DNA from: Ylistrum balloti
Taxonomy: Eukaryota
Direction of reading: 5' to 3'
Length of the DNA stretch: 64,000 bases
Assembly: GCF_031769215.1 (NCBI RefSeq)
Contig: NW_026782425.1
Location: 62,001-126,000 of the forward strand
The position numbers and the translations under genes were made by a program. Numbering within the stretch: position 1 is the stretch's first letter; each line of letters starts with the position of its first letter. The notes beneath the pieces were generated by a model. That model saw only the letters and a program-made list of their open reading frames with translations. It did not search any database and was not told the origin of the DNA. Shown here piece after piece: positions 28,284 through 59,619 of the stretch.

Positions 28284-29278
28284 ATGGCTCAGCTTACTGA
28301 AGGTGAATGTGATTTGGAAAATAGGGACCCAAACAATCTAAACGACCATTGTAAGGTAAGGCCAAATAATTTTGATTATACATTGGTTGAAATTTAAAGT
28401 TATATCTGACATTTGCTGAATCGATCTTTTTTAAAACTATACATTTTATCAAGTTCTTTTGTTGGAAAACTACTTATGTTAATTAAAAGATTATTAATTC
28501 CTTGAAATATCTGAAATTGTAAATAAAGCGCAACTTGTGATTGTTGACTTTCGGTTTAACTTCTTTACTCACTGAATTTTCTCTCCTTCGAGAATAGGAA
28601 AAAAATCTTTGTAAAGAAAAATCTTTTATAATTGAGTTTGAAATTAATGTAACAAACAAGAGTATGTAGCAATGTTTTATTCCATTTTTTAATGTTTCAA
28701 TTTCGGCATATAGAAACGAAACCTAGAATTCCACACAACATAAAAGAGGAATACTGTTGTTCGCACGACTATATTGAGACCGATGTCACATCTACCGTAT
28801 TTTAAACATGATGCGTATTTGATAACATATAGGTAGATAGCACATATTCAATACATAATATAGATCTGACAAGAGAACCGTTAGTATTACAAAAAAGGTT
28901 GCTTTTGGAATTTGTTCATGAGTGGTTTCTTTTCTTTCCAAGGTCGCGTTTGAAGATGTCCTTGGAGAACCTGATTATATACGAAGCATTGACTGTGTAT
29001 GGAAGAACAGCTACTGGTGTTTCAACTGCGGTAAAAACTGCTGCTACAAATTCATGACCTGTCTTTGTGGAATTTGCATCGCGCTCTACTGGGGCTGTGA
29101 GTTCGCCATTATTGCTTTCGATCAAATCTGGTGCATAACTCCGTCTCTCAGAGTCTTCTCCATCTACTGCGGCTGCGCGCAGAAGTTCTTCGGTACCATC
29201 ATCCAATGCTTCTTGGCTCCAATCTGCGAGACCTTCGCCCTATGTTTCAGCCGTATTTCTGTTACAAACTCTTCTTGA
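28284..29278 (+). CDS. Caveolin-family protein CavA, 135 aa: join(28284..28355,28943..29278)
   Basis: Exon 1 MAQLTEGECDLENRDPNNLNDHCK, GT donor, AG acceptor, exon 2 VAFEDVLGEPDYIRSIDCVWKNSY...GICIALYWG...ITP. Has the DLxNRDP motif and the FEDVxxEP caveolin signature. The phase-0 intron sits where vertebrate caveolins have it (K|xxFED). TATATAAA at 28183, AATAAA at 29562. Confidence 0.95.
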
Positions 29279-31276
29279 TTCTGTACTACAGACTGATGAT
29301 TGCTTCTCGTGAAACTGTGAAAGGGCGAATATTCTATGGGCTACTGTCTTACTGTTATTCTAATAGATAAACACTTTCACCAAATGGAACAATAACATAT
29401 CTGAGCGGCCTATACTATTGTTTCCGGAATTGGATACATTATTTACATTTCAAGGAAAGGCACTGCCAAAATATTGAAGCTCATGTGACGACGACGGTGG
29501 TTAAATCTGTGATATTCCATGAATATTTTCTTATTTATGACTTTATTATATATATTATACAAATAAATTTTGTGTTTCGTAGCAATTTGTCTTGTTTTGA
29601 CTGGATTTAATATTTCAGATGATTTGAAACATAGTGCACGTATATGTTATTCTGATTAAAAAACAACATGTATTATAAACCAAGGATGGAAACAAACATA
29701 GCAACCAAACAAATTTATTGTTGTAGCAACCACCTGGATATACCAGTAGACTAGTTCATAGCAACCAACCGAACAAATTAGCAAACATGTTCATAGCAAC
29801 CCACCGGATATATCACTGTTTGTATCAATATATACTTTATAGGTATTTAACTTATTAAATAGAAATTAAGGAACGCTACAACATTTTATCCAATATAAAC
29901 CGGAAAATAATGATTTTTATAGGTTATTGTAGAAACGTGTAAACACACGCAGGGTATAACAATTTAGACTTTTATAACATGCGCTAAACTGACGTTGAGA
30001 TGATCAAGCCTGGAACATTGCCTTCGAATGTTCAAGAACAGAAAATAGTTACGAATTAGTTGTTAAAAGAGCATGCACCCTGGGTTTTTAGAAAAGCGAT
30101 GAAACTATGTAATTATCGTGAACTAGTTATATGTCCATGTAATCACTCCACAAAGCACTTTTAACAACATGCACTTGATAGTTTCATTAATGTGTTGTTT
30201 AATTTCTGTTTCTTTCAAAAACCTATCAAAACAGGTAACACAGATCTTGCGAAGCGATTTGACAGAGGGGTTCGAGATATGTATATTTGTGAAGATAATA
30301 AGGAAGTTTTACAGTCGCCATATATGATAGTTTCTTGTGCGATACGAAGTCGTTGTTTACCTTGTTCTCATTTAGAAATGTGACTATTTGGATTGACCAA
30401 CATTAACATTATGGGTGTCGTCGATGAAGAAGAAGGCGCTTTCCATTCCTGAAAACATAGTCTTATTTTCCTTGGAATTTTTTTCATTAGACTATTTTTT
30501 TGTTCGTAATTGCACCAGTCACATCGAATTCGAATTTCTATTTGAAAACTTTAAAAACAGAATAGTCCACGCTGGCACTAAGCTAAACACACTGCTATTT
30601 GACATGCTCCTAAAAACGATTAGGATTTAGGATGATCAGTGTATCAATAAATCAAATCATATTTTTCTATATAAGAAACGAAAAGAAAATACCGCCATGT
30701 CAATAGATTTCTAAATCAAACTCAAATTCAGTGAAACCAGGTTAAAGCATGAACAAACGAAAGATTAAAACAAAGACTCCTGAAAAAACCACAAGGTGTT
30801 CCGGAGGAGTACGCGTCTGCTGCTTCATCGTCGATACCGTCCCTTCCCCTTTAGACGAATAGCTGTAACTAAGCACCAACGAGTTTTAGCACAGAAAATA
30901 GTCTGATTAGTGATACAAATCATAATTACACTAAACATTGTATATTGAATCATCTTCGAGTTAAAAGCTTAATCTGGTATAACTAAACAACCATCTCAAT
31001 ACTCCACCCATACAAGTATATTTGGTGGCGTACACACGGAACACAATTCACATTGAACAGCGATTCCTTTGGACATTTAGAGACAAAGAACAAATGTTTC
31101 GCCTCAGTGACAATTGGTTGTCTATCGCTTCCTTCTACGCGAATCAACATTAAGATCTGCGTCATTTAACATACTTCTAGCAGGCTTACATACTGCGCAT
31201 TCTGTAAATTCTTTATTTAAAGTCATTAACAGTCTGCATCTTAATTTATGTATGCAATTATTTAAATATCATAAAA

Positions 31277-32160
31277 ATGACAGAGCAATATGCAGCACTC
31301 GATTTGAAATCAAGGAATGCGATCCTAATTCTCTTCATGGAAACGTGCAGGTTAGTCTTGGTTGTGTAATATGATGGACATTGTCCATTTTAAGCAATTA
31401 AGTCATGATTTTAAAATATGATAATTGTAAAAATGAAAATGAAACTAAATCTTTGTGGTATTAAGACACGATATGGCTGTGTAGAATATATTCATAGTAT
31501 AAAGAACACAATGATATGAGAAAATACGGATTATTTACTTCCTTATGTTATCAATGTGTTGCATTTATGACTATTGTTCACAATGTTTTCGGGAACGTCA
31601 TAAAGACTGGACAATTCGAATTAATCAGAAAATTGTTTTCTACCGTCGATCAATGCGCTAATAGTTTTCATAATGTATTCTGGTAATTTAAACCCTCACC
31701 ACTTCAACAAAAATAAAAAGTTAGAACATATATATATATTGTTATTTTTGACAGTAGTATTAACGCACTTGAAGAAAGGAATTCCATGGGTTAAAATCTT
31801 ACTTCACATACAACCTTTCGTTTAACAGGTAGATTTTCATGATGTGCTAGGCGAGCCTGATGAAACTCACAGCGTAGAATGTTTATGGGCTCATCTCACA
31901 GGTGCATTATCTGCTCAAAGAACTGTTGTTACAAGTTTGTGACATTTATATGTGAGCTCCGTACAGCTCTAGCATGGGGCCGTGAATTCGCCATCATCAC
32001 GTATGTGTAAATTTGGATCCGTGCCCCGGCTCTGAAAGCCTACCAACTGACCACGGGAATTCTGCAGCGGTTCTTTGGAACATGCATCAGTTGCTGTTTA
32101 GCTCCCGTCTGTGAAACAGTTGGATTATGCTTCAATAATATTTCAATGAAAAAGCTATAA
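31277..32160 (+). pseudogene. Caveolin pseudogene psi1: exon 1 31277..31350, exon 2 31829..32160
   Basis: Exon 1 MTEQYAALDLKSR + 5 extra nt (AATGC) + DPNSLHGNVQ|GT, a frameshift. Exon 2 VDFHDVLGEPDETHSVECLWAH, then a 1-nt frameshift to HRCIICSKNCCYKFVTFICELRTALAWGREFAIITYV*IWIRAPALKAYQLTTGILQRFFGTCISCCLAPVCETVGLCFNNISMKKL*, with an in-frame TAA. Confidence 0.9.
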
Positions 32161-32754
32161 ATATGAATGACATATGCTGAAACCTAAAATATTTGGACTT
32201 TCCAAACTCATCTTCTGGATGTCGTATTAATTTATTGAAACTTATCCTTTTAATAAGATAAAAATAGTTGTATCTTAATACATATGGGAATACAAATTTA
32301 TATGTTATTTACAAATAAGTTTTTAATTAAATAAAAACATAGAAAATGAGTAACTTTTGTTGAAATTCGCTTAAGTTTAATGAAATATATCAGTATGTTC
32401 AACATAGAATTCTAAAGAACGTTAAGTGCTACCATTCAAATAAATTAAAACATGAAATTGCTTTGTCGAAAAACAGTTTCAAATTTCATAACACTCTGGC
32501 AATGCCAAATCTTTGTTAGAACTATTTTCGTGCAAGAAATCGTCAATTGACGGGAAAACATGTAACACAGTGTTTCAAAGGATGTAGATAATGAAAAGGA
32601 AGTTTTATCCTGGTAACCAGAAAATAAATCACTGACAGTCATATACATGTGATAGTACTCCTCTTTTTTTATTTAATTAAACGGAGAAACGACTCTACCG
32701 AAAAGATACTTCATATCTATCGTAAACAAAAATGAATCGCTTTATTTTTACACC

Positions 32755-33332: not shown

Positions 33333-36300
33333 ATGTACACTATCACCCTATAAATGATTTACTTACATATCATCGGAACATAGCGTCCATGTACATTATC
33401 ACCCTATATATGATTTACTTACATATCATCGGAACATATCGTCCATGTACATTATCACCCTATATATGATTTACTTACATATCATTTCGGAACATAGCGT
33501 CCATGTACATTATCACCCTATATATGATTTACTTACTTATCATTTCGGAACATAGCGTCCATGTACATTATCACCCTATAGATCATAGCGTCCATGTACA
33601 CTATCACCCTATATATGATTTACTTACATATCATTTCGGAACATAGCGTCCACGTACACTATCACCCTATATATGATTTACTTACATATCATTTCGGAAC
33701 ATAGCGTCCACGTACATTATCAGCCTATAGATGATTTACTTACATATCATTTCGGAACATATCGTCCATGTACATTATCACCCTATATATGATTTACTTA
33801 CTTATCATTTCGGAACATATCGTCCATGTACATTATCACCCTATATATGATTTACTTACATATCATTTCGGAACATAGCGTCCATGTACATTATCACCCT
33901 ATATATGATTTACTTACATATCATTTCGGAACATAGCGTCCACGTACATTATCAGCCTATAGATGATTTACTTACATATCATTTCGGAACATATCGTCCA
34001 TGTACATTATCAGCCTATAGATGATTTACTTACATATCATTTCGGAACATAGCGTCCACGTACATTATCACCCTATAGATGATTTACTTACATATCATTT
34101 CGGAACATATCGTCCATGTACATTATCACCCTATATATGATTTACTTACTTATCATTTCGGAACATAGCGTCCACGTACATTATCACCCTATAGATAATT
34201 TACTTACATATCATTTCGGAACATATCGTCCATGTACATTATCACCCTATATATGATTTACTTACTTATCATTTCGGAACATAGCGTCCACGTACATTAT
34301 CAGCCTATAGATGATTTACTTACATATCATTTCGGAACATATCGTCCATGTACATTATCACCCTATATATGATTTACTTACTTATCATTTCGGAACATAG
34401 CGTCCACGTACATTATCACCCTATATATGATTTACTTACATATCATTTCGGAACATAGCGTCCACGTACATTATCAGCCTATAGATGATTTACTTACATA
34501 TCATTTCGGAACATAGCGTCCACGTACATTATCAGCCTATAGATGATTTACTTACATATCATTTCGGAACATATCGTCCATGTACATTATCACCCTATAT
34601 ATGATTTACTTACTTATCATTTCGGAACATAGCGTCCACGTACATTATCACCCTATAGATGATTTACTTACATATCATTTCGGAACATATCGTCCATGTA
34701 CATTATCACCCTATATATGATTTACTTACTTATCATTTCGGAACATAGCGTCCATGTACATTATCACCCTATATATGATTTACTTACTTATCATTTCGGA
34801 ACATATCGTCCATGTACATTATCACCCTATAGATGATTTACTTACATATCATTTCGGAACATATCGTCCATGTACATTATCACCCTATATATGATTTACT
34901 TACTTATCATTTCGGAACATAGCGTCCATGTACATTATCACCCTATAGATCATAGCGTCCATGTACATTATCACCCTATAGATGATTTACTTACATATCA
35001 TTTCGGAACATATCGTCCATGTACATTATCACCCTATATATGATTTACTTACTTATCATTTCGGAACATATCGTCCATGTACATTATCACCCTATATATG
35101 ATTTACTTACATATCATTTCGGAACATATCGTCCATGTACATTATCACCCTATATATGATTTACTTACTTATCATTTCGGAACATATCGTCCATGTACAT
35201 TATCACCCTATATATGATTTACTTACTTATCATTTCGGAACATATCGTCCATGTACATTATCACCCTATAGATGATTTACTTACATATCATTTCGGAACA
35301 TATCGTCCATGTACATTATCACCCTATATATGATTTACTTACTTATCATTTCGGAACATAGCGTCCATGTACATTATCACCCTATAGATCATAGCGTCCA
35401 CGTACATTATCACCCTATATATGATTTACTTACATATCATTTCGGAACATAGCGTCCACGTACATTATCACCCTATATATGATTTACTTACTTATCATTT
35501 CGGAACATATCGTCCATGTACATTATCACCCTATAGATGATTTACTTACATATCATTTCGGAACATATCGTCCATGTACATTATCACCCTATATATGGTT
35601 TACTTACTTATCATTTCGGAACATAGCGTCCATGTACATTATCACCCTATATATGGTTTACTTACTTATCATTTCGGAACATAGCGTCCATGTACATTAT
35701 CACCCTATATATGGTTTACTTACTTATCATTTCGGAACATAGCTTCCATGTACATTATCACCCTATATATGATTTGCTTACATATCATTTCGGACTATAG
35801 CGTCCATGTACATTATCACCCTATATATGATTTACTTACCTATCATTTCGGAACATAGCGTCCATGTACATTATCACCCTATAGATCATAGCGTCCATGT
35901 ACATTATCACCCTATATATGATTTACTTACCTATCATTTCGGAACATAGCGTCCACGTACATTATCACCCTATATATGATTTACTTACATATCATTTCGG
36001 AACATAGTGTCCACGTACATTATCACCCTATAGATGATTTACTTACATATCATTTCGGAACATATCGTCCATGTACATTATCAGCCTATAGATGATTTAC
36101 TTACTTATCATTTCGGAACATATCGTCCATGTACATTATCACCCTATAGATCATAGCGTCCATGTACACTATCACCCTATATATGATTTACTTACATATC
36201 ATTTCGGAACATAGCGTCCACGTACATTATCACCCTATATATGATTTACTTACCTATCATTTCGGAACATATCGTCCATGTACATTATCACCCTATATAT

Positions 36301-37078
36301 GATTTACTTACCTATCATTTCGGAACATATCGTCCATGTACATTATCACCCTATAGATGATTTACTTACCTATCATTTCGGAACATATCGTCCATGTACA
36401 TTATCACCCTATATATGATTTACTTACATATCATTTCGGAACATAGCGTCCATGTACATTATCACCCTATAGATGATTTACTTACATATCATTTCGGAAC
36501 ATAGCGTCCACGTACATTATCAGCCTATAGATGATTTACTTACATATCATTTCGGAACATAGCGTCCACGTACATTATCACCCTATAGATGATTTACTTA
36601 CATATCATTTCGGAACATAGCGTCCACGTACATTATCAGCCTATAGATGATTTACTTACATATCATTTCGGAACATAGCGTCCACGTACATTATCAGCCT
36701 ATATATGATTTACTTATTTATCATTTCGGAACATATCGTCCATGTACATTATCACCCTATATATGATTTACTTACTTATCATTTCGGAACATATCGTCCA
36801 TGTACATTATCACCCTATATATGATTTACTTACATATCATTTCGGAACATAGCGTCCATGTACACTATCACCCTATAGATGATTTACTTACATATCATTT
36901 CGGAACATATCGTCCACGTACATTATCACCCTATATATGATTTACTTACTTATCATTTCGGAACATATCGTCCATGTACATTATCACCCTATAGATCATA
37001 GCGTCCATGTACACTATCACCCTATAGATGATTTACTTACATATCATTTCGGAACATAGCGTCCATTTACACTATCAC
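33333..37078. repeat. Minisatellite, 58 bp unit, about 65 copies, with interspersed 33 bp deletion units
   Basis: Unit TCATTTCGGAACATAGCGTCCATGTACATTATCACCCTATATATGATTTACTTACATA. Confidence 0.98.
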
Positions 37079-38698
37079 GAATGATTTACAACGAATTATT
37101 CTAATATAACGAATAAACCTAAAATGAAATAAATTCGTAGAAATATTTAAGTTAAAATTTAAGTTCTGAGAATTCTTTAATCAAACATTACCCAAAGGAT
37201 AAAGCAGCTGTGAAGGTAAACGAAACTTTCCGATCAACTGAATGCATTCACAACATGATCAAATCTGAATAGTTTGTGTACACTACGTACAATATGATTT
37301 AATCATTTAATGCTTAAGGAATAAATGTAATGGACACCTAATACGTTACGGTGACCTATGTAGGCAAGGTGTACGTTGCAGTGATGTTTCATTTCTAAAC
37401 AGTAAAAAAGTGCCAAAACGCAGTACATACGATCATTATTCCCAAGTTACTCTAAAGTTGGTTCGAATAAATAATTGAATCGTGAAGTATTTAGACGACA
37501 CTGAAAAGGAAATTACAAAGAGAACTGACACACTGAAATATCAATACGACCCGTCGCAACAAATTTGCAAATGGAAAATGAAAAGAAATATTTCCAATAA
37601 GGTTAATTTCATATTTGATGTTTTTAACTTACGATTGGTCAACTTTGAACAACTGGGGCCAGAATGCAAAGCATGCAACATATATCAATGAAAAAAGGCT
37701 TAGTTTCCTATAGCTGTAGAGAACATTATCGTCCTTGAATAATTACTGATTATCAAAGTCTTTTTTCACAAATATCACTTTATTGAAATGCGTGCGTACC
37801 TAACTCTATAAATTGGTTTGTCCATTCACCTGTAGCTCTCCGTTAGCTGCCATCAAGCACAAAATAATATCACTTGATATGATGGTTTTTAAACAAATCA
37901 CTCATGCAATATGCACAAGGTCAAATACGTATTCAGAGAAAGAAGTTTTTGTATACAATCGATTTCTTCTTTATTTCTGTTATAATGTATAATGCTATGT
38001 TTTAACACTTTAGGTGATGTGCCGAGATGCCGTATTGTTATATTAGTAAAGAAAACTGACGTAGGATACATGTGCGTGTTTCGATGTAATAAGATAGTCC
38101 TTAGTGATTATATTGCACTAAATTTAAAATACGCTGTGATCACCTTGTGTCGTTTATAGCATACAAGTAAGCTAGAATGGAAAGAAAACCTGATACCATA
38201 CTTATAAGACGAATCTAAATGTTAGCGATGACCTTGGTTAGAGTATGTTCTATAGTGATATCTATCATGACATTCGAGTGGTATATTTTAGAGTAACTCA
38301 ATACGAGAACAAAAGTTTTCAGAAAAAAAATCCAACCGAATGTGTAAGCACACTTATCTACTTTTTCATCGGTCAAATCAATAGCGCCGTTAGTTTTCAG
38401 TCCGTAAATAATAGGGCTTTAACATTTTCATTCATACCGATTAACAATGCCTATGTTAAATACTATACTTCCATTGGAGACAAAGCTAACGTTATGTCTA
38501 GGAGAGCTTTCGTTAGGTCGTTGCCAATGACGCCGAGTTTTTAATGAAAATGACCCACCCCTTTCCGTCAGCCTGACAGTTGTCAAGCAATTATCAATCG
38601 ACAAAAAGGGGTATAAAATCCGACCAAGGGCCGCTCGCTACCACTCTCCAGAAAAGGTCTGCTTTGCTCACCTCAGTATCTCCAAAAGGCACACCAAA

Positions 38699-39594
38699 AT
38701 GGCGGAGCAAGCAACGGAAGTTGATTTGGATAACAGGGATCCTAACTCTCTTAACTCCACAATTCAGGTATGAATATATAAGTATTTAAACATCTTGCTC
38801 TTCGTAATTGATATTTCAGCATTTGAACCTGTTTAATCTATTGATAATATTGTTTCATGAATTAACAGATAGATAATAACTATAACTTTGGATTAAAGTT
38901 AGTGAAATTGCATTCTGCTTTCAACATGGTTTTGATAATTATTACTATGTTGAAACTGACTCATATTATCATACATTTTTTGCCTTCAAATATCGATATT
39001 AAAAATGACATTCACTTCAATTAGCGCTGTGGCGGTCACTATAGTGACCAGTAAGAAGAAACACTCAATTTAACCGCTTTGGAACTTTATCAGAATTCCA
39101 CTACAATATTGATAATGTTAAATATAATATGTACAAATCTTTGCAAACCATTTCTTTATAATGTATATAAAAGGCTACCATGTATCTAACCAGTTGGCGT
39201 TGTGTGTGTTAGCATGTCACGATTCCTTTGTAGTCATCAGTGTTGTTTTATGATTCGACAGGTCGCCTTTGAAGATGTGCTAGGAGAACCAGAGGGAGCC
39301 CATAGCATCGACTGTGTCTGGAAAAACAGTTACAAATGCTTTACATGCGGAAAGAACTGTTGTTACAAGTTCATGAGCACACTGTGTGGAATATGTATCG
39401 CTCTGTACTGGGGATGTGAGTTCGCCATGATCACATTTGAGATGGTGTGGTGTTGTACACCTGCTCTCAAAGTTCACTCCATTCTTCTTGGAATCTGTCA
39501 ACGTTTCTTCGGATCTTGCATCCAGTGCTGTCTGGCTCCTGTCTGTGAAACGATTGGATTATGTTTTAGCAACATTACTATTACTAAAAAGTGA
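38699..39594 (+). CDS. Caveolin-family protein CavB, 133 aa: join(38699..38767,39262..39594)
   Basis: MAEQATEVDLDNRDPNSLNSTIQ|VAFEDVLGEPEGAHSIDCVWKNSYKCFTCGKNCCYKF...; GT-AG intron; TATAAAA at 38612; AATAAA at 39782. Confidence 0.95.
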
Positions 39595-41751
39595 CATACT
39601 TCCAGTTATCATTGAACTCTGTGCCATCTACAAATTAAATGACTGTGATATGAAGATAACTCCAATAGTTTTCTGAAAACATGTAACATTTTACAAACAC
39701 TTGATCTTATATTAATTTCATGTGGAATTGTACTTGATATGTTTATTGCTACTCTGTTTATCATTGATGTATTTCTTTTACAATAAATTATTTGTTCATA
39801 TTCATATCAAACTTACGTCATGATTTTTGTTTATTATACACTGATGTAGATATAAAAACAGGAAGAACGTCAATGGGTAATATAACCAATTAATACATCC
39901 AGAATCGGAGACGCAGACACCAAATTCTATAGGCGGTGTTGTTGTTGCCATGGTTACTATCAGTTGACGGCTAATAACATTTTGTGCTATTGGGGGATAT
40001 ACATGTGCCAATCAAAGATACGCTGCAGTGTAAAGCAATCAGTAACAGCACAATTTAAAGATATTTACTTGTCTTTCTATTAATTTGAATTAAAAACTGA
40101 TAAATGATAGCAAGACATATTCTCGAGTTGATGTGACTAAAGATAAAGAAGTACCTATTGGGAGGTAAAAAGCATTTCCATCAAATTTTGTATGACAGTC
40201 TTGTGAAAATAGTTCTGGATCTGATATGTCCGTCAATCAATTATATATAATGCAAGGAAGACCTCTCAAATTATTGACTGTGTGTAGAATAGGTTAATCA
40301 GGCAAGCGTAAGAACGTATACACATCACAAAAGATTATCTTTCAAAAATGAACGTATTTGATAATGGATATTTGTTCTGTTGTGATGATTGAATGATAGG
40401 CAAAGACAAATTTATTTGGAAAGATATTGATGAAAGGCAATAGTTAAGTGAAAAAAACTTACAAATAAACTATACACTTCTAAGCTATTAGTGTTTAAAT
40501 ATTATCTTGAACATTGTTTTCAATGAAATTGATAGACAATGTACTTGACTTTTATAGAATTAAAATCCAAATAGATTATGTATGAGTTACCTAAATGCGT
40601 TTCGAAAAAAGAACCAAAAGCGAAAAAATAAAAATCAAGATACAGCAAGTATTAAAGAAAAACCCCAAATACTAGCGCACAAACAACGTATATAAGTATT
40701 ATACTGTCTGTAACTGAATCAACCATAAAAAAATTCACAAATAAGTCGAGTGTATGAAAAAACATTTTCCTTATGATGAGATGTAAAGAAAATGTATAAT
40801 AAGAAAATTTAAGGTCACTTCACAATACAGAATTTGAAAAATGCTCTAAATTCCACCATTAGTGACACGTCAGCCAAGTTCATCTGACAGAAGACAAGTT
40901 GAAATGGTACAGCAATATACAACGAAACAAGAACAGGATGACAAATACATCAACATAAACAAAACTAGCTGACAAGTATTTGAATGTCAATTCTGAAGAA
41001 TCTACTGGTATTACATAAACAATCCTGTTATAGAACCACCGTATAAATATATATAGAAAATGCAGAAAGGGGAAGGTTTGACGTTTGGGCATGGCATCCC
41101 ATTTTAAGATATGAAATATAAAATTCAATATTTAGTTAGGAAAAACTTTATTTTATATCTCTTAGTATGGGTGAAATGTGAAGATTTTAATCTTCCGAAC
41201 CTTACATGGTACATTTTACAAATGACACATGAGTATTATCATATGAAAATAGATATTAGATACATTAAGTGATAAATAATTTTATTATGTTTCTTTCAAA
41301 TTATAAATTCAGCTCCGTAATGCAAATATTTTGAAATATATCAATATTTCTGCAAACGTGAAGTGCATGTGTGCCTTCTGAGCCATTTTGAAAAATGTGT
41401 CTAATCCATAAAAAAGATTTTAGATATGATGCCCCTCAAATACATTCATGTATCAGGTGCACGATTTATGTTCGTATTTTCTTTTTAAAAATGTTATCAG
41501 AAATTCAAACCAATTTCAAGGAGACGCAGTATCAAGTACATTTACTTGAATTTGCCATAAAACACAGTAGTGAGGGAATAGTATACTTTTAAAGGCTGCT
41601 ATACAAAGTATTTTACATAGATCTTATTGCATTACATGCAAATTATTTTGCGTTAACATTTTAACTTTTAATTATTTAAAACAAAAACAAAAGAAAACGT
41701 AAAGTAAGAAACAAAACAAGGAAACAAAAACATAGCAAACAGGAAAAAACT

Positions 41752-41892
41752 TAACGATGGTTGACGTAACAAAACGTTAACATTTATAAAGAAATTGAGA
41801 AAAAAAGCAAAACATGAAAACAGAAAAAAAATCAAACAGGACAGAAGCTAACGATGGTTGACGTAACAAAACGTTCACATTTATAAAGAAAT
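41752..41892. repeat. 44 bp direct repeat (41752..41795 and 41849..41892, 1 mismatch) upstream of CavC
   Basis: TAACGATGGTTGACGTAACAAAACGTT(A/C)ACATTTATAAAGAAAT occurs twice. Confidence 0.9.
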
Positions 41893-42213
41893 GTTTAAAT
41901 ACATCAGACTGATTGTAGTTTTTAAGATCAATAGTTACAAAGTCGTACAGAGGTATTCAAAAGACACTGCCAGGAGGTTACTAACAGTCAGATCATTAAA
42001 ATACCTTATTATTATACATAATGACGTTTCCCTTGGATTCTTTTCATGGAATAAGACCCTCCCCTTTTTCATGCACTTATTCAGTGTTAAGTGACAGTTG
42101 TCAGGTAATCGCTTGGTACACAAAAAACAGAATATATTCGAACCACAGAAAACTGAGCACCACTTGTGTCCATTCCTTTACTGTGTGTGGATTGTACGAT
42201 ATTACCTACAGTC

Positions 42214-43274
42214 ATGGATGAGTCACCAATCGATCTGGAGCTAAGGGATCCCAATTCCTTGAATGCAAACGTGCAGGTACAAATCGTTTGTTTTAGTTCA
42301 GTTCTTGTTTTAACCTTTAAGTGTTTTAAAACGATATGTCTATTGGCAATATACGAAATAGCGATACATCGTTCCATTAAAAATTAAAATAGTAGATATT
42401 GTGTCATAATTGTGTGAGGGTGTTTTACCAACATTTTTTTCATACGCATGTACCCATTCAATATTATTTGTTCATAACTGAATCAGAACTAATTTTCAAA
42501 ACATTTCTTTTTGTATTTCATGTTTCGTATCAGGATTTCAGCTATATAATATTACTTACAATGTTTCTCACTTGATAACGATTAAGAACTCAGTGTTATA
42601 TTAAATCCGTTTAAAATCAGTAAACCAATGGAAATTACTATGCAAAGGAATTAACCAGACTTATAGGATATCAGGACTGTAGCATTGTATAAAAATGTCG
42701 CTTTTGTTCCTCTGAAAACGGCGTTTTAAATAGTATAAAGTTTATGTGCCCTATACATTTAATTTCTCTTCGAAGCAGCGTCAGAAACCACACACATTTC
42801 AGAACATGCTGTTTTCATCCTTAACGTTTTGAAAGATATCTGTTAAAACTACTCTTTTGTCGCTTATTTGTCCCTATCTTTCTCCTTTCACATTGGGATT
42901 AAGATTTCTATTGTATGTCCACAATCCCTTGTTCTCAATAGGTCGCCTTTGAAGATGTGCTAGGAGAACCAGAGGGAGCCCATAGCATCGACTGTGTCTG
43001 GAAAAACAGTTACAAATGCTTTACATGCGGAAAGAACTGTTGTTACAAGTTCATGAGCACACTGTGTGGAATATGTATCGCTCTGTACTGGGGATGTGAG
43101 TTCGCCATGATCACATTTGAGATGGTGTGGTGTTGTACACCTGCTCTCAAAGTTCACTCCATTTTTCTTGGAATCTGTCAACGTTTCTTCGGATCCTGCA
43201 TCCAGTGCTGTCTGGCTCCTGTTTGTGAAACACTCGGGTTGTGTTTCAGTAACATTACTATTACTAAGAAATGA
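42214..43274 (+). CDS. Caveolin-family protein CavC, 131 aa: join(42214..42276,42942..43274)
   Basis: MDESPIDLELRDPNSLNANVQ|VAFEDVLGEPEGAHSIDC...; GT-AG intron; AATAAA at 43631. Exon 2 is nearly identical to that of CavB. Confidence 0.93.
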
Positions 43275-47449: not shown

Positions 47450-47570
47450 GTTGATTTATGTGCTGTTAGAATCAAACACTGCCCATAACATCGATAGTGA
47501 TTGGACCAACAGCTGCAAATAATACCTGCGGAGGAAAGAACTGCTACAAGTTCATGAGTACACTGCGTCG
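47450..47570 (+). pseudogene. Decayed caveolin exon-2 5' remnant psi2 (possible matching exon-1 relic at 46130..46178)
   Basis: After AG|GTTGAT, allowing frameshifts, it reads AHNIDSDWTNSCK*..TCGGKNCYKFMSTLR versus AHSIDCVWTNSYKCFTCGKNCCYKFMSTLC in the intact paralogs. Similarity ends near 47570. The exon-1 relic (ATGGCG...CACGTGCAG, no GT donor) is weak. Confidence 0.75.
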
Positions 47571-50296: not shown

Positions 50297-51377
50297 ATGA
50301 TGTCGTCTAATCGTTATGGAGGAGTTGATTTAGAAAACCGGGACATCAATTATATTAACGATAACCTTCAGGTAAGTTACACTGATTCTAGAATAGTGTT
50401 ACTTAGTACACGAATGTTCAAGCGGAATGCTGTTTAGTGATATATCTGGTCAGAACCTAAATACTTAAAGGTTAATCATAATAATGCAAGACTATTCCCT
50501 TTAGCTTAAAAAATCATCTCTGTCACAGATGCATATTTCGCCTTTGTTTCTCTTGTTAAACTCATACATACAAATACATACAAATTCCCTCTGATGTACT
50601 ATTTAGNNNNNNNNNNNNNNNNNNNNNNNNNNNNNNNNNNNNNNNNNNNNNNNNNNNNNNNNNNNNNNNNNNNNNNNNNNNNNNNNNNNNNNNNNNNNNN
50701 NNNNNNNNNNNNNNNNNNNNNNNNNNNNNNNNNNNNNNNNNNNNNNNNNNNNNNNNNNNNNNNNNNNNNNNNNNNNNNNNNNNNNNNNNNNNNNNNNNNN
50801 NNNNNNNNNNNNNNNNNNNNNNNNNNNNNNNNNNNNNNNNNNTTAAAGTCAGAGATGAAGAACATTCACAAGTTGTTGTTATCTGTCTAAACATCAGTAG
50901 ACAATGGTAAATCGAAATCATTTCAAACATGATCAAACTTTTTATTTTCTGATTATGATTACGATCTTATCAGTTAATGAATTAATGTATTGGTGCCTTT
51001 TTATTGTTGTTTTGAAGGTTGTCTTTGATGACGTTCTTGGAGAGCCTTGGGGAACACACAGTTTTAACTGTGTATGGAGTGTCAGTTTTTCGTGTTACAC
51101 ATGTGGAAAAAACTGCTGCTACAGATTTTTGACAATACTTTGCGGACTTTGCATAGCATTATACTGGGGATGCGAATTTGCTGTTATCTCTTTTGAAGTT
51201 GTATGGTGTTGTACCCCAATATTCAACGTATGGCAGATGATTATTGGAATATTTAAAAAGATCAACGAAACGAATATCAGATGTTGTATAGCACCATTCT
51301 GTGAAAACATTGGCCTCATATTTAGTAAAATACAATGCAAGACCAGATTAACTTATATAGACTTAAAACGTGTCTGA
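50297..51377 (+). CDS. Caveolin-family protein CavD (divergent), 144 aa: join(50297..50371,51018..51377)
   Basis: MMSSNRYGGVDLENRDINYINDNLQ|VVFDDVLGEPWGTHSFNCVWSVSFSCYTCGKNCCYRF...; GTAAGT donor and AG acceptor. The intron spans the N gap, so the exon pairing is assumed. Confidence 0.88.
50607..50842. other. Assembly gap (236 N) inside the CavD intron
   Basis: Run of N. Confidence 1.
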
Positions 51378-52432: not shown

Positions 52433-53458
52433 ATGTCTGACGGAGAAGTTGATCTGTTGAATAGGGATCCTAATGGATTAAATAACACTGTGCAGGTTCG
52501 TTCAACTAATTATATTAAATTATCGACATTGAGAAATTTTTGTTCTAAATAACTGCAAATTATGTTATCTATAATGAAAATGTTCTAAATCTCATTATCA
52601 TTAATGATTTGTGAGAATGAAATAAATTCAACCAATTTTGTAACACAATATAAAACCAGAATTAAAAGCGAATGCATACTATGACAGAAAAGCCTGACAT
52701 CAAGTCAGAATCAAATGCTTAACATCTGCATTACGTTTTATTTGAAAAAATAACATACGTACATGAATAGGAGAATGTAATTAATTGATGCAGATATTGT
52801 TATTTTCTTTTTTTCTTTTTCTTTTTTTTTTTTTTTTTTTTTTTTGTTTTTTTTTTTTTTTTTTTTGTTTTGTTTTTTTTTTTTTAAGACAAGTACATGT
52901 ATGTATTATGTTATGACTTACTACCCTAGGTTTAAACGCAAACTTTCTAGATATGCGATTTCATTAGATCTCCATAGGCCGGAATTTGATACGTCTTACT
53001 GAAGTTAAAAAAAATCCTATACGCTAACCAGAATATAAAAAAAGTAAAGAACATACAATATCATTCACCTTCTACAACGATACCGGTAAATAAAAACAGG
53101 TAACACTATGGGTTATTTTTTCTAGGTAGCATTTGAGGATGTCCTCGGTGAGCCAGAAGGTACCCACAGCATTGACTGTGTCTGGACCAACAGTTACAAA
53201 TGCTTTACATGCGGAAAGAACTGTTGTTACAAGTTCATGAGCACTCTGTGTGGAATATGTATCGCTCTGTACTGGGGATGTGAGTTCGCCATGATCACAT
53301 TCAATGCTGTCTGGTGCTGTACTCCTGGCCTCAAGGTCTACACCATTACCTGTGGAATAGTTCAGAAGTTCTTCGGTACCTGTGTCACTTGTTGTCTTGC
53401 TCCTCTGTGCGAGACCTGTGGACTCATGTTCAGCAAAATACAAATAACGAAGTCATAG
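52433..53458 (+). CDS. Caveolin-family protein CavE, 131 aa: join(52433..52495,53126..53458)
   Basis: MSDGEVDLLNRDPNGLNNTVQ|VAFEDVLGEPEGTHSIDCVWTNSYKCF...; GT-AG intron; TATATAA at 52342. Confidence 0.95.
52803..52885. repeat. About 80 nt poly-T-rich tract in the CavE intron
   Basis: Direct reading. Confidence 0.9.
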
Positions 53459-54018
53459 GGATGACCACAAGCCAGCTACACGATGGGTCAATTTGTTCGG
53501 ATATAAACTTGCAGTATTAATAGTGATCTTGAAGCCATTTTCGGAAATTCGGACGAATTTGAATATTTATTCTCATGACTAAGACCAACATATACATTTG
53601 TGCTTTCACTTACTTGGGCAGTTAGCCTTACTGTGATATTCCCGGTGAATGTGATGACTTTTATAGCTATTAATACTCAAACATGGTATTTAATGTATGT
53701 CTTTTCCATGAATATAGCTATAAGAATGAACATTTGGATATAGTAAAGTATTAAAACTTAGTCCTATGTTTGTCTTTTTATTGCTGACAATTTGTACACC
53801 AAACTCAATCCTAATGTTCAACATTAGTTAGTGTAATTAATTGACAATAGTATCATGTATGTTTTATCATACGAGTACCATTAATGAAGCATGGTTTAAG
53901 TGTCTCAAAGTAAAGACTCACTTTTCTCCAGGGACCGATTTTTTCAATGTTTTGAAGGTTGCACATTTAATGCAAATTTGGATAAGATACAGTAGAGCTA
54001 GATAGTCAATTATACATT

Positions 54019-55209: not shown

Positions 55210-55586
55210 TAAGATTGAACCCGAACAAGTACCATACTAAAATTACAAAGTTACAAGAAATCTAGGAAGCTTAATCTATCAGTAATTGTAATTGGTCATG
55301 GCAAAATGTAAGTAAAATAGCTTAATAATAATGGCTAGTTTAAAGCACAGTCAAGCTGACAAAAAGTTCACTAAAGCAGATAAGACTGTACAGGACTTTT
55401 TTTAGACCATGAGTTAATGGCGTGTGTCGTTGATGAAGCAGAAAACGTCTATTCTTAGTAACACCTTTTCGTATTTTACTTTTTCAGTAGTATGTAGGGT
55501 ATTTCCTCCTCCAATATTTTGCCCTAGCATCTGATTCTGTTGGCATTTCAGTAATTTATTTGTTGTTCTCATTTCTTGACCTTATA

Positions 55587-57773
55587 AGTTGACATGTACC
55601 AAGTGTACCAAGTGTACATGTACCAAGTGTACCAAGTGGACATGTACCAAGTGTACCAAGTGTACATGTACCAAGTGTACCAAGTGTACCAAGTGTACCA
55701 AGTATACATGTACAAAGTGTACAAAGTGTACATGTACCAAGTGTACATGTACCAAGTGTACCAAGTGTACCAAAAGTACATGTACCAAGTGTACCAAGTG
55801 TACCAAGTGGACATGTACCAAGTAAACATGTACCAAGTGGACCAAGTGGACATGTACCAAGTGAACATGTACCAAGTGTACCAAGTGGACATGAACCAAG
55901 TTAACATTTACCAAGTGGACATGTACCAAGTGTACCAAGTGGACATGTACCAAGTGGACATGTACCAAGTGAACATGTACCAAGTGGACATGTACCAAGT
56001 GTACCAAGTGGACATGTACCAAGTGGACATGTACCAAGTGCACATGTACCAAGTGAACATGTACCCAGTGAACATGTACCAAGTTAACATGTACCAAGTG
56101 GACATATACCAAGTTAACAAGTACCAAATGGACATGTACCAAGTTTACATGTACCAAGTGGACATGTATCAAGTGGACATGTACATAGTTAACATTTACC
56201 AAGCTGACATGTACCAAGTGGACATATACGAAGTGAACATGTATCAAGTGTACCAAGTGGACATGTACCAAGTTAACATTTACCAAGCTGACATGTAGCA
56301 AGTGGACATATACCAAGTGAACATATATCAAGTGTACCAAGTGGACATGTGCTAAGTGGACATATACCAAGTGAACATGTACCAAGCTGACATGTACCAA
56401 GTGGACATGTACCAAGTTAACATTTTACCAAGTGTACCAAGTTTACCAAGTGGACATGTACCAAGTTAACATTTACCAAGTGTACCAAGTAGACATGTAC
56501 CGAGTGGACATGTACAAAGTTAACATTTACCAAGCTGACATGTACCAAGTGGACATATACCAAGTGAACATGTACCAAGTGTACCATGTGGACATGTACC
56601 AAGTAGACATATACCAAGTGAACATGTACCAAGCTGACATGTACCAAGTGGACATGTTCCAAGTTGACATGTACCAAGTGGACATCTACCAAGTTAACAA
56701 GTACCAAATGGACATGTACCAAGTTTACATGTACCAAGTGGACACGTACCTAGTAAACATGTACCAAGTGTACCAAATTTACATGTACCAAGTGGACATG
56801 TACCAAGTTAAAAGTACCAAGTGGACATGTACCAAGTTAACATGTACCAAGTGGACATCTACCAAGTGGACATATACCAAGTGAACATGTACCAAGTGTA
56901 CCAAGTGAACATGTACCAAGCTGACATGTACCAAGTGGACATGTACCAAGTTAACATTTACCAAGCTGACATCTACCAAGTTAACAAGTACCAAATGGAC
57001 ATGTACCAAGTTTACATGTACCAAGTGGACACGTACCTAGTAAACATGTATCAAGTGTACCAAGTTTACATGTACCAAGTGGACATGTACCAAGTTAAAA
57101 GTACCAAGTGGACATGTACCAAGTGGACATCTACCAAGTGGACATATACCAAGTGAACATGTACCAAGCTGACATGTACCAAGTGGACATATACCAAGTG
57201 GACATGTACCAAGTGTACCAAATGGACATGTACCAAGTGGACATGTACCAAGTGAACATGTACCAAGCTGACATGTACCAAGTGGACATATACCAAGTGG
57301 ACATGTACCAAGTGGACATATACCAAGTGGACATGTACCAAGGGAATATGTACCAAGCGGACATGTACCAAGTGGACATATACCAATTGGACATGTACCC
57401 AGTGAACATGTACCAAGTTAACATGTACTAAGTGGACATCTACCAAGTTAACAAGTACCAAATGGACATGTACCAAGTTTACATGTACCAAGTGGACATG
57501 TACCAAGTGGACATGTACCTAGTAAACATGTACCAAGTATACCAAGTGGACATGTACCATGTTAACAAGTTCCAAGTGGACATGTACCAAGTTAACATGT
57601 ACCAAGTGGACATGTACTAAGTGGACATGTACCAAGTGGACATATACCAAGTGAACATGTACCAAGTGTACCAAGTGGACATGTACCAAGTGGACATATA
57701 CCAAGTGAACATGTACCAAATTAACAAGTACCAAGTGTACCAAGTGGACCAAGTGGACGTGTACCAAGTAGAC
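55587..57773. repeat. Minisatellite of 15 bp (GTGGACATGTACCAA) and 9 bp (GTGTACCAA) units with larger internal duplications
   Basis: Direct reading. Blocks near 56681-56835 and 56967-57123 are near-identical higher-order copies. Confidence 0.97.
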
Positions 57774-58825
57774 CTGCATTCAATGTTACATGTTAAGTCA
57801 AATCGCAAAATATTAAAGATGTCTTTAGTTTCATAAAATACAAAAATGTAGAATAGTCTTTATAAGTGTCGAGGACCTAAAACAAATAGCTGAATATTAT
57901 AATATTGACCATAATTCGGTCGCTAATTGGCCCTTTTATCCTATTTACATAACCTTAGCTTGTTGTTATCATATACCGACCATAGCTCATTTTTAACTGA
58001 TATAAATAGAAAGTAATTGAAAATCTAATGCATCAGACGGACCGGTCATTTAGATGACGAAATGTCACCGCTGTGATGGTGGGTGGGTGGGTGGGTGTCT
58101 GTGTGTCTGTGTGTGATTGTGTGTCTATATGTGTGTATGTTCTCAATCAAACACATTTACAGTATTAGATAGTAACCAAGGTGAATATGAATTAAGGTTT
58201 AAAGAATACCGTATACGATCATAGTGTACGACTGATGAAAAAAATTCCTGATTTCTTCAATTCCAAATCCGACTTATCAAAAATACGACATAGTAAGACA
58301 CAAATCTCGGTCATCGAGGCTCGATAAATTTTAAAATCTACGACGGTGTTAAGAACTCCTATGAATGGAAACTAGTAAATGATCCTGATAGTACCTCACC
58401 TCACTGACCATAGTATGCTTCAAGACAAAAACATTTGCTGTGCCTCAGTCGGAAATAAAAATGATATAAATAAACTTAGTCAGGTATTGGTAACCCGCGT
58501 GTAGAGGCATATGAAAGTATTAAATGCTGGCGTTCAATTATCTTTGTAAACAAAGGAAATGCCGTATTCGCGATTGCATTTGCGATGTTCTATTTAAACT
58601 GACATATTGTTTGCTAAGTCCTCCAAAAAAAACTTCAATATCAACAGAGGTAAAGTATGATGATGTATCTCCCTTTCCTTAAAACCAACAATGAATGGGT
58701 CTTGATTCCCGTAGTTATGGGTACCGTAAGTATATAAAGGAAAGGCAGAAGGACCCAGGGTATACCGTGTCCAACACCAAACGTGCCAACATAGTCCGCC
58801 TTGAAACGTGCTATAAGGCTGAGAC

Positions 58826-59619
58826 ATGGCTGAACAAGAGGTTGATCTCCTCAATAGGGATCCAAATGGACTTAATGAGCACGCACAGGTGAGAGAATAT
58901 TTAAATGTATTTTGTGAAATATCAAATATATAGTTACCGGTTTCCCTGAAATTCTGGGTTTGTTGTAAAATAGTTCAAGATATTTGGTTAGGAGGAAAAC
59001 TGTTACAAGTTATTGAAGAAATCAAATTGGTTGGTCGGGTGGCTCAGCGGTAACGCACGAGCCTTTCACCTAACCGTTCGGGGTTCGATTCCTGTAACGG
59101 GCGTGAAGAGGTAGGTGGTTACCTGCCCGACCACGTGGGTTTCATACACCTGCTAAGTGTTTCATTTATTATGTTTCAATGGCATCTTTACTTGTGATAA
59201 ATGCTACACATTTCAAGTAATTGTTGATATCACTGTTTTCTTTCTTAAATATCTACCTGTAATGAATGCTGTCTGCCTAATTCCAGATCGCTTTTGAAGA
59301 TGTCCTCGGTGAGCCAGAAGGTTCCCATAGCATCGACTGTGTCTGGACCAACAGTTACAAGTGCTTTACATGCGGAAAGAACTGTTGCTACAAGTTCATG
59401 ACAACTTTGTGCGGTATCTGTATCGGTCTGTACTGGGGATGTGAGTTCGCCATAATCACCTTCAATGCTGTCTGGTGCTGTACACCTACTCTTAAAGCCT
59501 ATGGCATTGTCTGTGGAATTGTTCAAAAGTTCTTCGGTACATGCGTCACCTGCTGTTTGGCTCCTCTCTGCGAAACATTTGGATTAATATTCAGCAAGAT
59601 TCAAATGACGAAGTCTTAA
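58826..59619 (+). CDS. Caveolin-family protein CavF, 131 aa: join(58826..58888,59287..59619)
   Basis: MAEQEVDLLNRDPNGLNEHAQ|IAFEDVLGEPEGSHSIDCVWTNSYKCF...; GTGAG donor and CAG acceptor; TATATAAA at 58731; AATAAA at 59669 and 59978. Confidence 0.95.
59033..59143 (+). mobile_element. tRNA-derived SINE 5' portion in the CavF intron
   Basis: A box TGGCTCAGCGG 59040..59050 and B box GGTTCGATTCC 59082..59092, followed by GTGAAGAGGTAGGTGGTTACCTGCCCGACCACGTGGGTTTC and truncated there. Anticodon and acceptor stems do not pair. Confidence 0.75.

What the first reader, a model, noticed from the sequence alone, without database searches (positions are those of the whole stretch)
28284..59619. Tandem birth-and-death array of eight caveolin loci (6 intact, 1 pseudogene, 1 relic) in 31 kb
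Seen in sequence: eight same-strand caveolin loci share one two-exon plan and the same phase-0 intron, while introns and flanks look unrelated, and live, dead and decaying copies alternate. Established: vertebrates have three caveolins, with CAV1 and CAV2 adjacent, and invertebrate lineage-specific expansions exist. Inference: a local array this large with ongoing turnover suggests a diversified caveolin repertoire (tissue- or stress-specific paralogs, or hetero-oligomers) rather than one housekeeping caveolar scaffold. The family itself is known; the array and its dynamics are the interesting part.
Basis: partly seen in the sequence, partly recalled or inferred. Interest (0 to 1): 0.8.

Follow-up and report, generated by a model that had tools for sequence, protein, structure and literature searches.

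The report
Conserved scallop caveolin gene array
The window holds eight of the twelve members of an old, same-strand row of small caveolin (membrane-shaping protein) genes in the saucer scallop Ylistrum balloti; the genes are real and under selection, but already annotated, and other scallops carry the same row.

Summary
Between 28284 and 59619 there are six intact two-exon caveolin genes, one pseudogene and one 111-nt relic, all on the + strand. All six intact genes have GT..AG, phase-0 introns at the position of the last human CAV1 intron.

The N gap lies wholly inside the intron of the sixth locus, so no reading frame crosses it. The Mizuhopecten ortholog has the same two exons around an unbroken 758-nt intron.

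The genome is Ylistrum balloti. Five of the six genes equal RefSeq 'caveolin-1-like' proteins exon by exon.

The array is larger than reported: 12 loci in 62 kb, four of them beyond the window. There is a second cluster of nine, and about 23 caveolin core exons genome-wide. Mizuhopecten has a matching array in the same order, and Pecten and Argopecten carry orthologous genes.

Orthologs show dN/dS of 0.04-0.15. No paralog pair shares intron or flank sequence.

This is therefore an ancient, conserved array with occasional gene death and gene conversion confined to exon 2, not rapid turnover. A haplotig artefact is excluded. Expression in this species could not be tested because no RNA run was available.

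The scan had already noted other caveolin clusters elsewhere in this genome.

Interest is modest.

The parts
28284..28355 (+). Locus 1 (W01) exon 1: ATG plus pin motif, 24 codons, donor GTAAGG
   Evidence: equals the N-terminus of RefSeq XP_060078221.1
28943..29278 (+). W01 exon 2: caveolin core, 111 codons plus TGA. Positions 43-236 (28985-29178) are a tract shared with the tenth array gene, 42 kb downstream
   Evidence: Pfam E 1.3e-29
31252..31350 (+). Locus 2 (W02, pseudogene) exon-1-like piece. The pin motif is degraded (CDP instead of RDP) and the usual start is not recognisable; donor GTTAGT is kept
31829..32160 (+). W02 pseudogene exon-2-like piece: 1-nt deletion near 31888, in-frame TAA at 32008, conserved Cys replaced. 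Closest to the Mizuhopecten My01/My03 type
38699..38767 (+). Locus 3 (W03) exon 1, 23 codons
   Evidence: XP_060078220.1
39262..39594 (+). W03 exon 2, 110 codons plus TGA. The first 222 nt (39262-39483) are identical to W04
   Evidence: Pfam E 2e-32
42214..42276 (+). Locus 4 (W04) exon 1, 21 codons
   Evidence: XP_060078219.1
42942..43274 (+). W04 exon 2. 42942-43163 is identical to W03
47458..47568 (+). Locus 5 (W05) relic: 111 nt matching exon-2 positions 14-126 of the W03/W04 type, with three indels and no exon 1
50297..50371 (+). Locus 6 (W06) exon 1, 25 codons. Pin motif carries Ile in place of Pro; donor GTAAGT
   Evidence: orthologous to exon 1 of Mizuhopecten My08
50607..50842 (.). Assembly gap (236 N), wholly inside the W06 intron (50372-51017)
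   Evidence: letters not looked up
51018..51377 (+). W06 exon 2, 119 codons plus TGA, with a C-terminal tail also present in the Mizuhopecten ortholog
   Evidence: Pfam E 6.6e-28
52433..52495 (+). Locus 7 (W07) exon 1, 21 codons
   Evidence: XP_060078222.1
53126..53458 (+). W07 exon 2. Positions 64-176 (53189-53301) are a W03/W04-type patch with 1 difference in 113 nt
58826..58888 (+). Locus 8 (W08) exon 1, 21 codons
   Evidence: XP_060078226.1
59287..59619 (+). W08 exon 2, 110 codons plus TAA

Best explanation
The region is the first two thirds of an ancient tandem array of twelve caveolin loci in the scallop Ylistrum balloti. Ten are intact, one is a pseudogene and one is a relic. All lie on one strand within 62 kb.

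Each live gene has two exons. Exon 1 encodes the start and the 'pin' motif. Exon 2 encodes the signature motif, scaffolding and spoke regions and the C-terminal strand. The product is a 128-144 residue, cysteine-rich protein that corresponds to little more than the structured core of human caveolin-1 (residues about 47-175).

The duplications predate the split of the scallop lineages compared here. Since then the genes have been kept by purifying selection. At least one lineage-specific death has occurred, and short gene-conversion tracts inside exon 2 have homogenised some paralogs (W03/W04, W07 from W03/W04, and W01 with the tenth gene).

Shown: gene structures, family membership, array extent, orthology, selection, conversion tracts, and tandem linkage of W03 and W04.

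Inferred: that the proteins form caveolin-type membrane discs, and that the paralogs are used in different tissues or conditions.
For: Family: PF01146 at E 1e-13 to 2e-32 on exon 2 alone, and 1e-37 to 1e-39 on the matching RefSeq proteins, covering profile positions 4-132 of 133. Alignment to human CAV1 (7SC0) is gapless over residues 67-173 for exon 2. For the RefSeq product of W03 it runs over 47-173 and includes the pin motif.

Gene models: ATG, GT..AG, phase 0, no internal stops. Five of six are identical exon by exon to RefSeq Ylistrum balloti proteins.

Extent: 11 Pfam-level core exons plus the relic on the 211,790-bp contig, and none in the flanking 38 kb upstream or 14 kb downstream.

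Age: the Mizuhopecten scaffold carries 12 full and 3 degenerate loci on one strand in matching order. Supported orthogroups span up to four scallop species.

Selection: dN/dS 0.04-0.15 at dS of about 1-1.8.

Conversion: the W03-W04 identical run of 222 nt gives permutation p<5e-5, and their dS is 0.17 against about 1.3 for orthologs. W07 switches partner within exon 2. W10's exon 1 and position are My14-like, but its exon-2 core is W01-like.

Linkage: a contig of a DNA run that differs by about 0.7% bridges 39486-42974. The shared tract has about twice the depth of its flanks.
Against: No RNA data for this species could be found, so transcription and splicing of each gene rest on RefSeq models, intact signals and selection.

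No annotated product was retrieved for W06. Continuity across its intron gap is supported only by the ortholog's structure.

dS is saturated and the backbone of the trees is weakly resolved. The age of the whole array is therefore inferred from orthogroups and order, not from a dated tree.

The gene sets from Argopecten and Pecten are incomplete samples.

The tract borders used in the Fisher tests were chosen after seeing the data; the run-length permutation test does not have that problem.
Confidence: 0.85

Rival explanations
1. A fast birth-and-death array: most copies are young, lineage-specific duplicates that are continually gained and lost.
For: There is a pseudogene and a relic among live genes. 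The W02 type is alive in Mizuhopecten and Argopecten but dead here. Mizuhopecten has a 4.9-kb unit duplicated at 99.2% identity and another of about 2.9 kb at 88-90%, plus its own degenerate copies.
Against: In this genome no pair of copies shares intron, UTR or flank similarity. Orthologs are retained in order across species. dS between orthologs is saturated while dN/dS is 0.04-0.15. The similar pairs are explained by tracts confined to exon 2.
Confidence: 0.2
2. An assembly artefact: allelic haplotypes or collapsed/expanded repeats laid in tandem.
For: Bivalve genomes are highly heterozygous. There is an assembly gap in the array. W03 and W04 share a 222-nt identical stretch.
Against: Copies differ by 2-48% in exon-2 protein sequence and have unalignable introns and flanks, which alleles would not. 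A contig from a run with about 0.7% differences runs from the end of W03 exon 2 through the spacer, W04 exon 1 and its intron into W04 exon 2. The shared tract has about double depth. Mizuhopecten shows the same array and order.
Confidence: 0.02
3. Besides one-gene-one-transcript use, the row also works as a complex unit: read-through transcripts splice an upstream exon 1 to a downstream exon 2. Every junction is phase 0, so this would give in-frame pin-motif/core combinations.
For: All loci are on one strand, closely spaced (1-6.5 kb) and share the intron phase. The GenBank models of Mizuhopecten join exon 1 of one member to exon 2 of a later one (OWF35034.1) and fuse two neighbours (OWF35036.1).
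Against: Each exon 2 has its own exon 1 400-670 nt upstream. No orphan exon 1 was found in 114 kb. RefSeq models here are one-to-one. The Mizuhopecten models span near-identical duplicated units and may be prediction errors. There is no RNA evidence.
Confidence: 0.1

Closest known systems
Orthologous caveolin array of Mizuhopecten yessoensis (scaffold NEDP02076743.1, about 276-354 kb; OWF35031-OWF35040), with the RefSeq 'caveolin-1-like' gene runs of Pecten maximus and Argopecten irradians
   Same: Same two-exon genes, same strand, and matching order of types. Orthologs are W06-My08, W09-My13, W11-My15, W12-OWF35040 and W01-OWF35031. It also contains dead copies and exon-limited homogenisation.
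   Different: Copy number per type differs: three W03-type genes there against two plus a relic here. The 'AFHDV'-type gene is alive there (two copies) and dead here. Mizuhopecten has very young whole-unit duplicates, and this genome has none.
Vertebrate CAV1-CAV2 locus and human caveolin-1 (PDB 7SC0)
   Same: Same family: PF01146, pin motif, signature motif, and gapless core alignment. Paralogs are adjacent in the genome. The last intron is at the same codon boundary, CAV1 K65|I66; this rests on established knowledge of the CAV1 exons of 30, 165 and 342 nt.
   Different: Twelve loci instead of two. The proteins lack the about 45-residue disordered N-terminus and carry 13-17 Cys in exon 2 against 3 in CAV1. 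No cavin gene was detected in this genome (a weak negative).
Tandemly expanded gene families of bivalves (for example C1q-domain genes, PMC6835236; IAPs, PMC7831173)
   Same: Local tandem arrays with pseudogenes and lineage differences in copy number.
   Different: Those families are much larger and largely lineage-specific. This array is small and old, and its members are kept as orthologs across scallops.
Concerted evolution by ectopic gene conversion in tandem families (for example globin and histone clusters; established knowledge)
   Same: Paralogs within a species are more alike than orthologs over short tracts, with mosaic exons and unconverted flanks.
   Different: Only some members and only 110-220 nt tracts are affected. 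Homology, and hence conversion, is confined to the exon-2 coding sequence.

Membership tests
Caveolin (Pfam PF01146) | Profile score above the curated cut-off (25 bits) | tested here: met
   48.7-112.4 bits on exon 2 alone. 127-135 bits on the identical RefSeq proteins, covering profile positions 4-132 of 133.
Caveolin (Pfam PF01146) | Signature motif (FEDVIAEP in CAV1) followed by scaffolding, spoke/intramembrane region and C-terminal strand, collinear with CAV1 | tested here: met
   Gapless phmmer alignment of W03 exon-2 residues 2-108 to 7SC0 residues 67-173, E 4.7e-22. The motif reads FEDVLGEP.
Caveolin (Pfam PF01146) | Cysteines at the palmitoylated positions of CAV1 (C133, C143, C156; established knowledge) | tested here: inconclusive
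   In the alignment, the W03 residues opposite C143 and C156 are Cys and the residue opposite C133 is Ala. There are 14 further Cys. Acylation itself was not tested.
Caveolin (Pfam PF01146) | Assembly into disc-shaped oligomers in the inner leaflet | not testable with these tools
   Needs expression and EM or biochemistry.
Type II caveolins (Han et al. 2025, PMC12330381) | Pin motif (CAV1 residues 49-60) before the hook | tested here: met
   The RefSeq product of W03 aligns to CAV1 47-173 with the pin motif conserved. The same D-L-x-N-R-D-P-N-x-L-N pattern occurs in exon 1 of W01, W03, W04, W07 and W08. W06 has Ile for Pro.
Type II caveolins / CAV1-3 gene structure | Last intron, phase 0, just before the signature motif | tested here: met
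   All six junctions fall between the residue aligned to CAV1 K65 and that aligned to I66. The human exon border itself is from established knowledge and was not re-derived here.
Vertebrate-type caveola coat (caveolin plus cavin) | A cavin (PF15237) gene in the genome | tested here: not met
   No six-frame match at E <= 0.01 in the 648-Mb assembly. This is a weak negative, because the controls hold no positive genome.
Birth-and-death multigene family | Tandem paralogs kept as orthologs across species, with pseudogenes among them | tested here: met
Birth-and-death multigene family | Recent duplicates (units sharing introns and flanks) | tested here: not met
   None in this genome's array. They are present in Mizuhopecten: 4.9 kb at 99.2%.
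Concerted evolution by gene conversion | Tracts where paralogs are more alike than orthologs, with significant clustering of differences and unconverted flanks | tested here: met
   W03-W04: 0/222 against 12/108 differences, longest-run permutation p<5e-5. W07 and W10 are mosaics. Flanks are unrelated.

The most novel reading that the evidence does not exclude
The paralogs co-assemble into mixed caveolin discs. Conversion confined to exon 2 keeps a shared, cysteine-dense oligomerisation and membrane core interchangeable. The parts that are not homogenised (the pin-motif exon 1, the 5' end of exon 2 and the C-terminal tails) stay paralog-specific and tune rim contacts or partners. Occasional cross-gene splicing would add further combinations.
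Probability: 0.15. Interest if true: 0.55.

Novelty: new member of a known kind. Interest (0 to 1): 0.3.

Why it matters
Caveolin biology rests almost entirely on the three vertebrate genes. Here is a compact set of ten minimal caveolins, hardly more than the structured core and very rich in cysteine. They have been kept under selection across scallops, in a genome where no cavin was found.

That makes the array a natural series of variants. It could be used to ask what a caveolin disc does without the caveola coat, which positions tolerate change, and whether paralogs mix.

As genomics, however, it is ordinary: an old tandem family with some gene loss and gene conversion. Its genes are already in RefSeq, although six searches of the held literature found no description of the array.

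Tried and rejected
Haplotig or assembly artefact: rejected.

cDNA-templated conversion, suggested by the W03/W04 tract starting exactly at the acceptor: rejected. The two exon 1 sequences differ right up to the donor, and all homology between copies simply ends at the exon-2 coding borders. The tract starts where homology starts.

A further relic upstream of locus 1 (27484-27554) and one at 22061-22138: alignment scores of 33 and 42 against shuffled maxima of 30. Not accepted.

W02 as the ortholog of the Mizuhopecten pseudogene at the same array position: rejected. W02 matches the live My01/My03 type, whereas the Mizuhopecten pseudogene is of the W03 type.

Exon 1 alone in Pfam and PDB searches: too short, no hits. 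Database proteins identical to the models were used instead.

RNA evidence: the one run found holds the region as DNA.

My first look for the My08 exon 1 failed because 610 nt between two fetched loci were missing from my merge. This was not a gap in that assembly and was resolved.

Literature: six searches gave no description of molluscan caveolin arrays.

Exons were never joined into a spliced protein for any search. All searches of my models were run exon by exon, by reference.


Full report
OBSERVATION. A Pfam scan of the long + strand ORFs gives Caveolin (PF01146) for six of them, at E 1e-13 to 2e-32. tblastn with these ORFs against the whole window finds the same six. It also finds a two-frame match at 31817-32154 and a short two-frame match at 47460-47565. 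It finds nothing else above noise in 64 kb.

A motif scan and a small profile built from the exon-1 peptides locate one short ATG-bearing exon upstream of each core exon.

The six intact genes are:
- W01: 28284-28355 and 28943-29278
- W03: 38699-38767 and 39262-39594
- W04: 42214-42276 and 42942-43274
- W06: 50297-50371 and 51018-51377
- W07: 52433-52495 and 53126-53458
- W08: 58826-58888 and 59287-59619

Each has an ATG, a GT donor, an AG acceptor behind a pyrimidine-rich run, both exons in multiples of three, and no internal stop. Introns are 398-665 nt.

THE GAP. The 236 N at 50607-50842 lie inside the W06 intron (50372-51017). Exon 1 is complete upstream of the gap and exon 2 is complete downstream, so no reading frame crosses it.

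Whether the two sides are one molecule could not be tested directly. No RNA run exists in the index. I did not lay DNA reads over the gap, because that would read its letters.

There is indirect support. The Mizuhopecten ortholog (My08) has an exon 1 with the same unusual features: an R-Y-x-G-V-D-L-x-N-R-D start and a pin motif without proline. In the GenBank model it is spliced to the orthologous core exon across an uninterrupted 758-nt intron. The assembled W06 intron of 646 nt is within the range of its neighbours.

No annotated W06 product was retrieved.

THE DEAD COPIES. W02 keeps a donor (GTTAGT) and an acceptor. Its lesions are:
- a degraded exon 1, with C-D-P in place of R-D-P and no recognisable original start;
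- a 1-nt deletion near 31888;
- an in-frame TAA at 32008;
- substitutions of conserved cysteines.

W05 is a 111-nt remnant of exon-2 positions 14-126 of the W03/W04 type. It shows 72% identity and three indels, scores 97 against a shuffled maximum of 35, and has no exon 1.

WHAT THE COPIES SHARE. Self-blastn of the window, with satellites masked, gives hits between copies only within the exon-2 coding sequence. For W03/W04 the hit runs from 2 nt before the acceptor to the stop codon, at 96.4%. Introns, UTRs and spacers give nothing.

ORGANISM AND ANNOTATION. The word search with W03 exon 2 returns scallop caveolins first. Cluster look-up lists RefSeq proteins named Ylistrum balloti on a 211,790-bp contig, and the window's contig has that length.

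Checked exon by exon (starts with exon 1, ends with exon 2, lengths add up), five models match:
- W01 = XP_060078221.1
- W03 = XP_060078220.1
- W04 = XP_060078219.1
- W07 = XP_060078222.1
- W08 = XP_060078226.1

I never joined exons for a search. Full-length tests used these database proteins. They match PF01146 over profile positions 4-132 of 133. The W03 product aligns to human caveolin-1 (7SC0) residues 47-173, including the pin motif. Exon 2 alone aligns without gaps to residues 67-173.

The intron therefore falls between the residues aligned to CAV1 K65 and I66. From established knowledge of the CAV1 exons (30, 165 and 342 nt), that is the last CAV1 intron.

THE ARRAY IS LARGER. A six-frame Pfam search of the 648-Mb assembly finds 23 core exons:
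- eleven on this contig (seven in the window plus four beyond it, at contig 129.8, 133.6, 140.2 and 152.0 kb);
- nine in a second cluster on another contig (347-425 kb, mixed strands);
- three singletons.

The four extra genes on this contig have their own exon 1 and intact exon 2. Two of them equal RefSeq proteins. Scanning contig positions 52-166 kb with both exon profiles shows 12 loci between 90.3 and 152.4 kb, all on the + strand, and nothing outside that span. The second cluster encodes clearly different proteins, so it is not the other haplotype.

COMPARISON WITH OTHER SCALLOPS. On Mizuhopecten scaffold NEDP02076743.1 (276-354 kb) there are 12 full and 3 degenerate core exons with their first exons, all on one strand.

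The order of types matches: the W03 type, then W06, the W07/W08 type, W09, W10 and W11. The orthologs of W01 and W12 are the flanking locus tags OWF35031 and OWF35040.

Trees give strongly supported pairs or groups:
- W06-My08
- W09-My13, plus one Argopecten protein
- W11-My15
- W12-OWF35040
- W01 with proteins of Pecten, Argopecten and Mizuhopecten

Between the two species, orthologous core exons are 79-83% identical in DNA, with dS of about 0.8-2.5, dN 0.06-0.14 and dN/dS 0.04-0.15. All intact genes, W06 included, have therefore been under purifying selection for a long time. Non-coding DNA is almost entirely unalignable between the species.

W02 matches the My01/My03 type, which is also alive in Argopecten. 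That gene type therefore died in the Ylistrum lineage.

GENE CONVERSION. W03 and W04 differ at 12 of 330 sites. All 12 lie after position 222, and the longest-run permutation test gives p<5e-5. Their dS is 0.17, against about 1.3 to the Mizuhopecten orthologs.

W07 differs from W03 at 1 of 113 sites in positions 64-176 but at 75 of 217 sites elsewhere. Against W08 it differs at 11 and 38 sites.

The tenth gene has the exon 1 and array position of the My14 type. Its exon-2 core is nevertheless W01-like (7 differences in 194 nt against 39 in 136 outside), and it nests inside the W01 orthogroup. The two genes are 42 kb apart.

The tract borders were chosen after inspection, so those p values are optimistic. 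The run test is not affected.

Because the first exons of W03 and W04 differ up to the donor, a cDNA template is not needed. The tract simply begins where homology begins.

These results confirm two earlier notes on this window, s1-234473 and s1-234474.

NOT AN ARTEFACT. The only run holding the region behaves as DNA of the same species with about 0.7% differences: 36 substitutions, five small indels and one 54-nt deletion in 5.1 kb.
- One of its contigs runs from 39486 (W03 exon 2) through the spacer, W04 exon 1 and the intron to 42974 (W04 exon 2).
- Another covers 38300-39294.
- The contigs break inside the shared tract, whose pieces have depth about 20 against 10.8 for the flanks. That is what two genomic copies with identical sequence would give.

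WHAT IT MOST LIKELY DOES. The products are caveolins of the type with a pin motif, reduced to the structured core, with 13-17 cysteines in exon 2, eight of them invariant among the ten array genes.

By homology they should form membrane-embedded oligomeric discs. This is inference. No cavin gene was found (a weak negative), so a vertebrate-type caveola coat should not be assumed.

Paralog-specific expression or mixed oligomers remain untested.

A paper on Argopecten purpuratus larvae reports caveolin transcripts among differentially expressed genes (PMC10020363). Short contigs from other, unnamed organisms encode spliced full-length relatives. Neither bears directly on this species.

NOVELTY. 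The family, the gene structure, tandem arrays and gene conversion are all known kinds. The genes are annotated here and in three other scallops. The recent survey of caveolin evolution notes multiple paralogs and includes Pecten maximus, but does not describe such arrays in its text (PMC12330381). Six searches found no description of them elsewhere.

The scan itself had already noted other caveolin clusters in this genome.

Verdict: a real, well-defined but unsurprising gene array, new only as an undescribed member of a known kind.

Noticed in passing
beyond the window: contig positions 129.4-152.4 kb (window-equivalent about 67.4-90.4 kb); loci L014, L016, L018, L009, L031-L033: Four more intact two-exon caveolin genes continue the array on the same strand. 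The window cuts the array after its eighth locus.
   Followed up: yes
another contig of the same genome, 347-425 kb (L001, L002, L004-L006, L011, L013, L017, L020), and three single loci (L003, L021, L022): A second cluster of nine caveolin core exons on mixed strands. It includes four near-identical copies (94-95% DNA identity) of a type whose exon 2 starts one codon earlier. There are also three dispersed, more divergent genes with long C-terminal tails.
   Followed up: partly
window 28943-59619 (all exon 2): The proteins are very cysteine-rich: 13-17 Cys per exon 2 among the ten array genes, eight of them invariant. Human CAV1 has three. In the alignment many of the Cys replace hydrophobic residues of CAV1.
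   Followed up: partly
window 38390-38698: About 310 nt upstream of the W03 start codon are 76% identical to the region upstream of the Mizuhopecten ortholog, although synonymous sites are saturated. This may be a conserved 5' UTR or promoter block. No other array gene showed one.
   Followed up: no
window 53623-53679: A 57-nt element about 165 nt downstream of the W07 stop codon is 89% identical to sequence downstream of both Mizuhopecten W07/W08-type genes. This may be a conserved 3' UTR element.
   Followed up: no
window 50297-50371 and 51340-51377: The W06/My08 lineage has lost the proline of the pin motif in both species. It carries a C-terminal tail (L-T-Y-I-D-L) that is shared by the orthologs and absent from the other paralogs.
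   Followed up: partly
window 33333-37078, 55604-57773, 61340-64000, 22657-24031, 10421-11529: Large satellites fill several spacers: a 58-mer x 58, a 15-mer x 150, a 51-mer x 52 that runs off the window, a 60-mer x 23 at 98% identity, and a 36-mer x 30. The Mizuhopecten array also has long satellites in its spacers.
   Followed up: no
L024, L027, L028 (Mizuhopecten scaffold): Two GenBank gene models there join exons of different array members: OWF35034.1 (exon 1 of one gene to exon 2 of the gene after next) and OWF35036.1 (a fusion of two neighbours, 226 aa). They may be prediction errors across a 99%-identical 4.9-kb duplication, or a hint of cross-gene splicing.
   Followed up: partly
window 6835-7137 (+): An ORF that matches Pfam Prefoldin (E 4.6e-9), probably an exon of a neighbouring gene upstream of the array.
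   Followed up: no
window 44101-44289 (-): A short ORF that looks by eye like a fragment of a reverse-transcriptase domain, in the spacer between W04 and the relic. It has no Pfam hit.
   Followed up: no
whole genome (G000): There is no six-frame match to the cavin family (PF15237), so these caveolins probably work without the vertebrate coat partner. This is a weak negative.
   Followed up: partly
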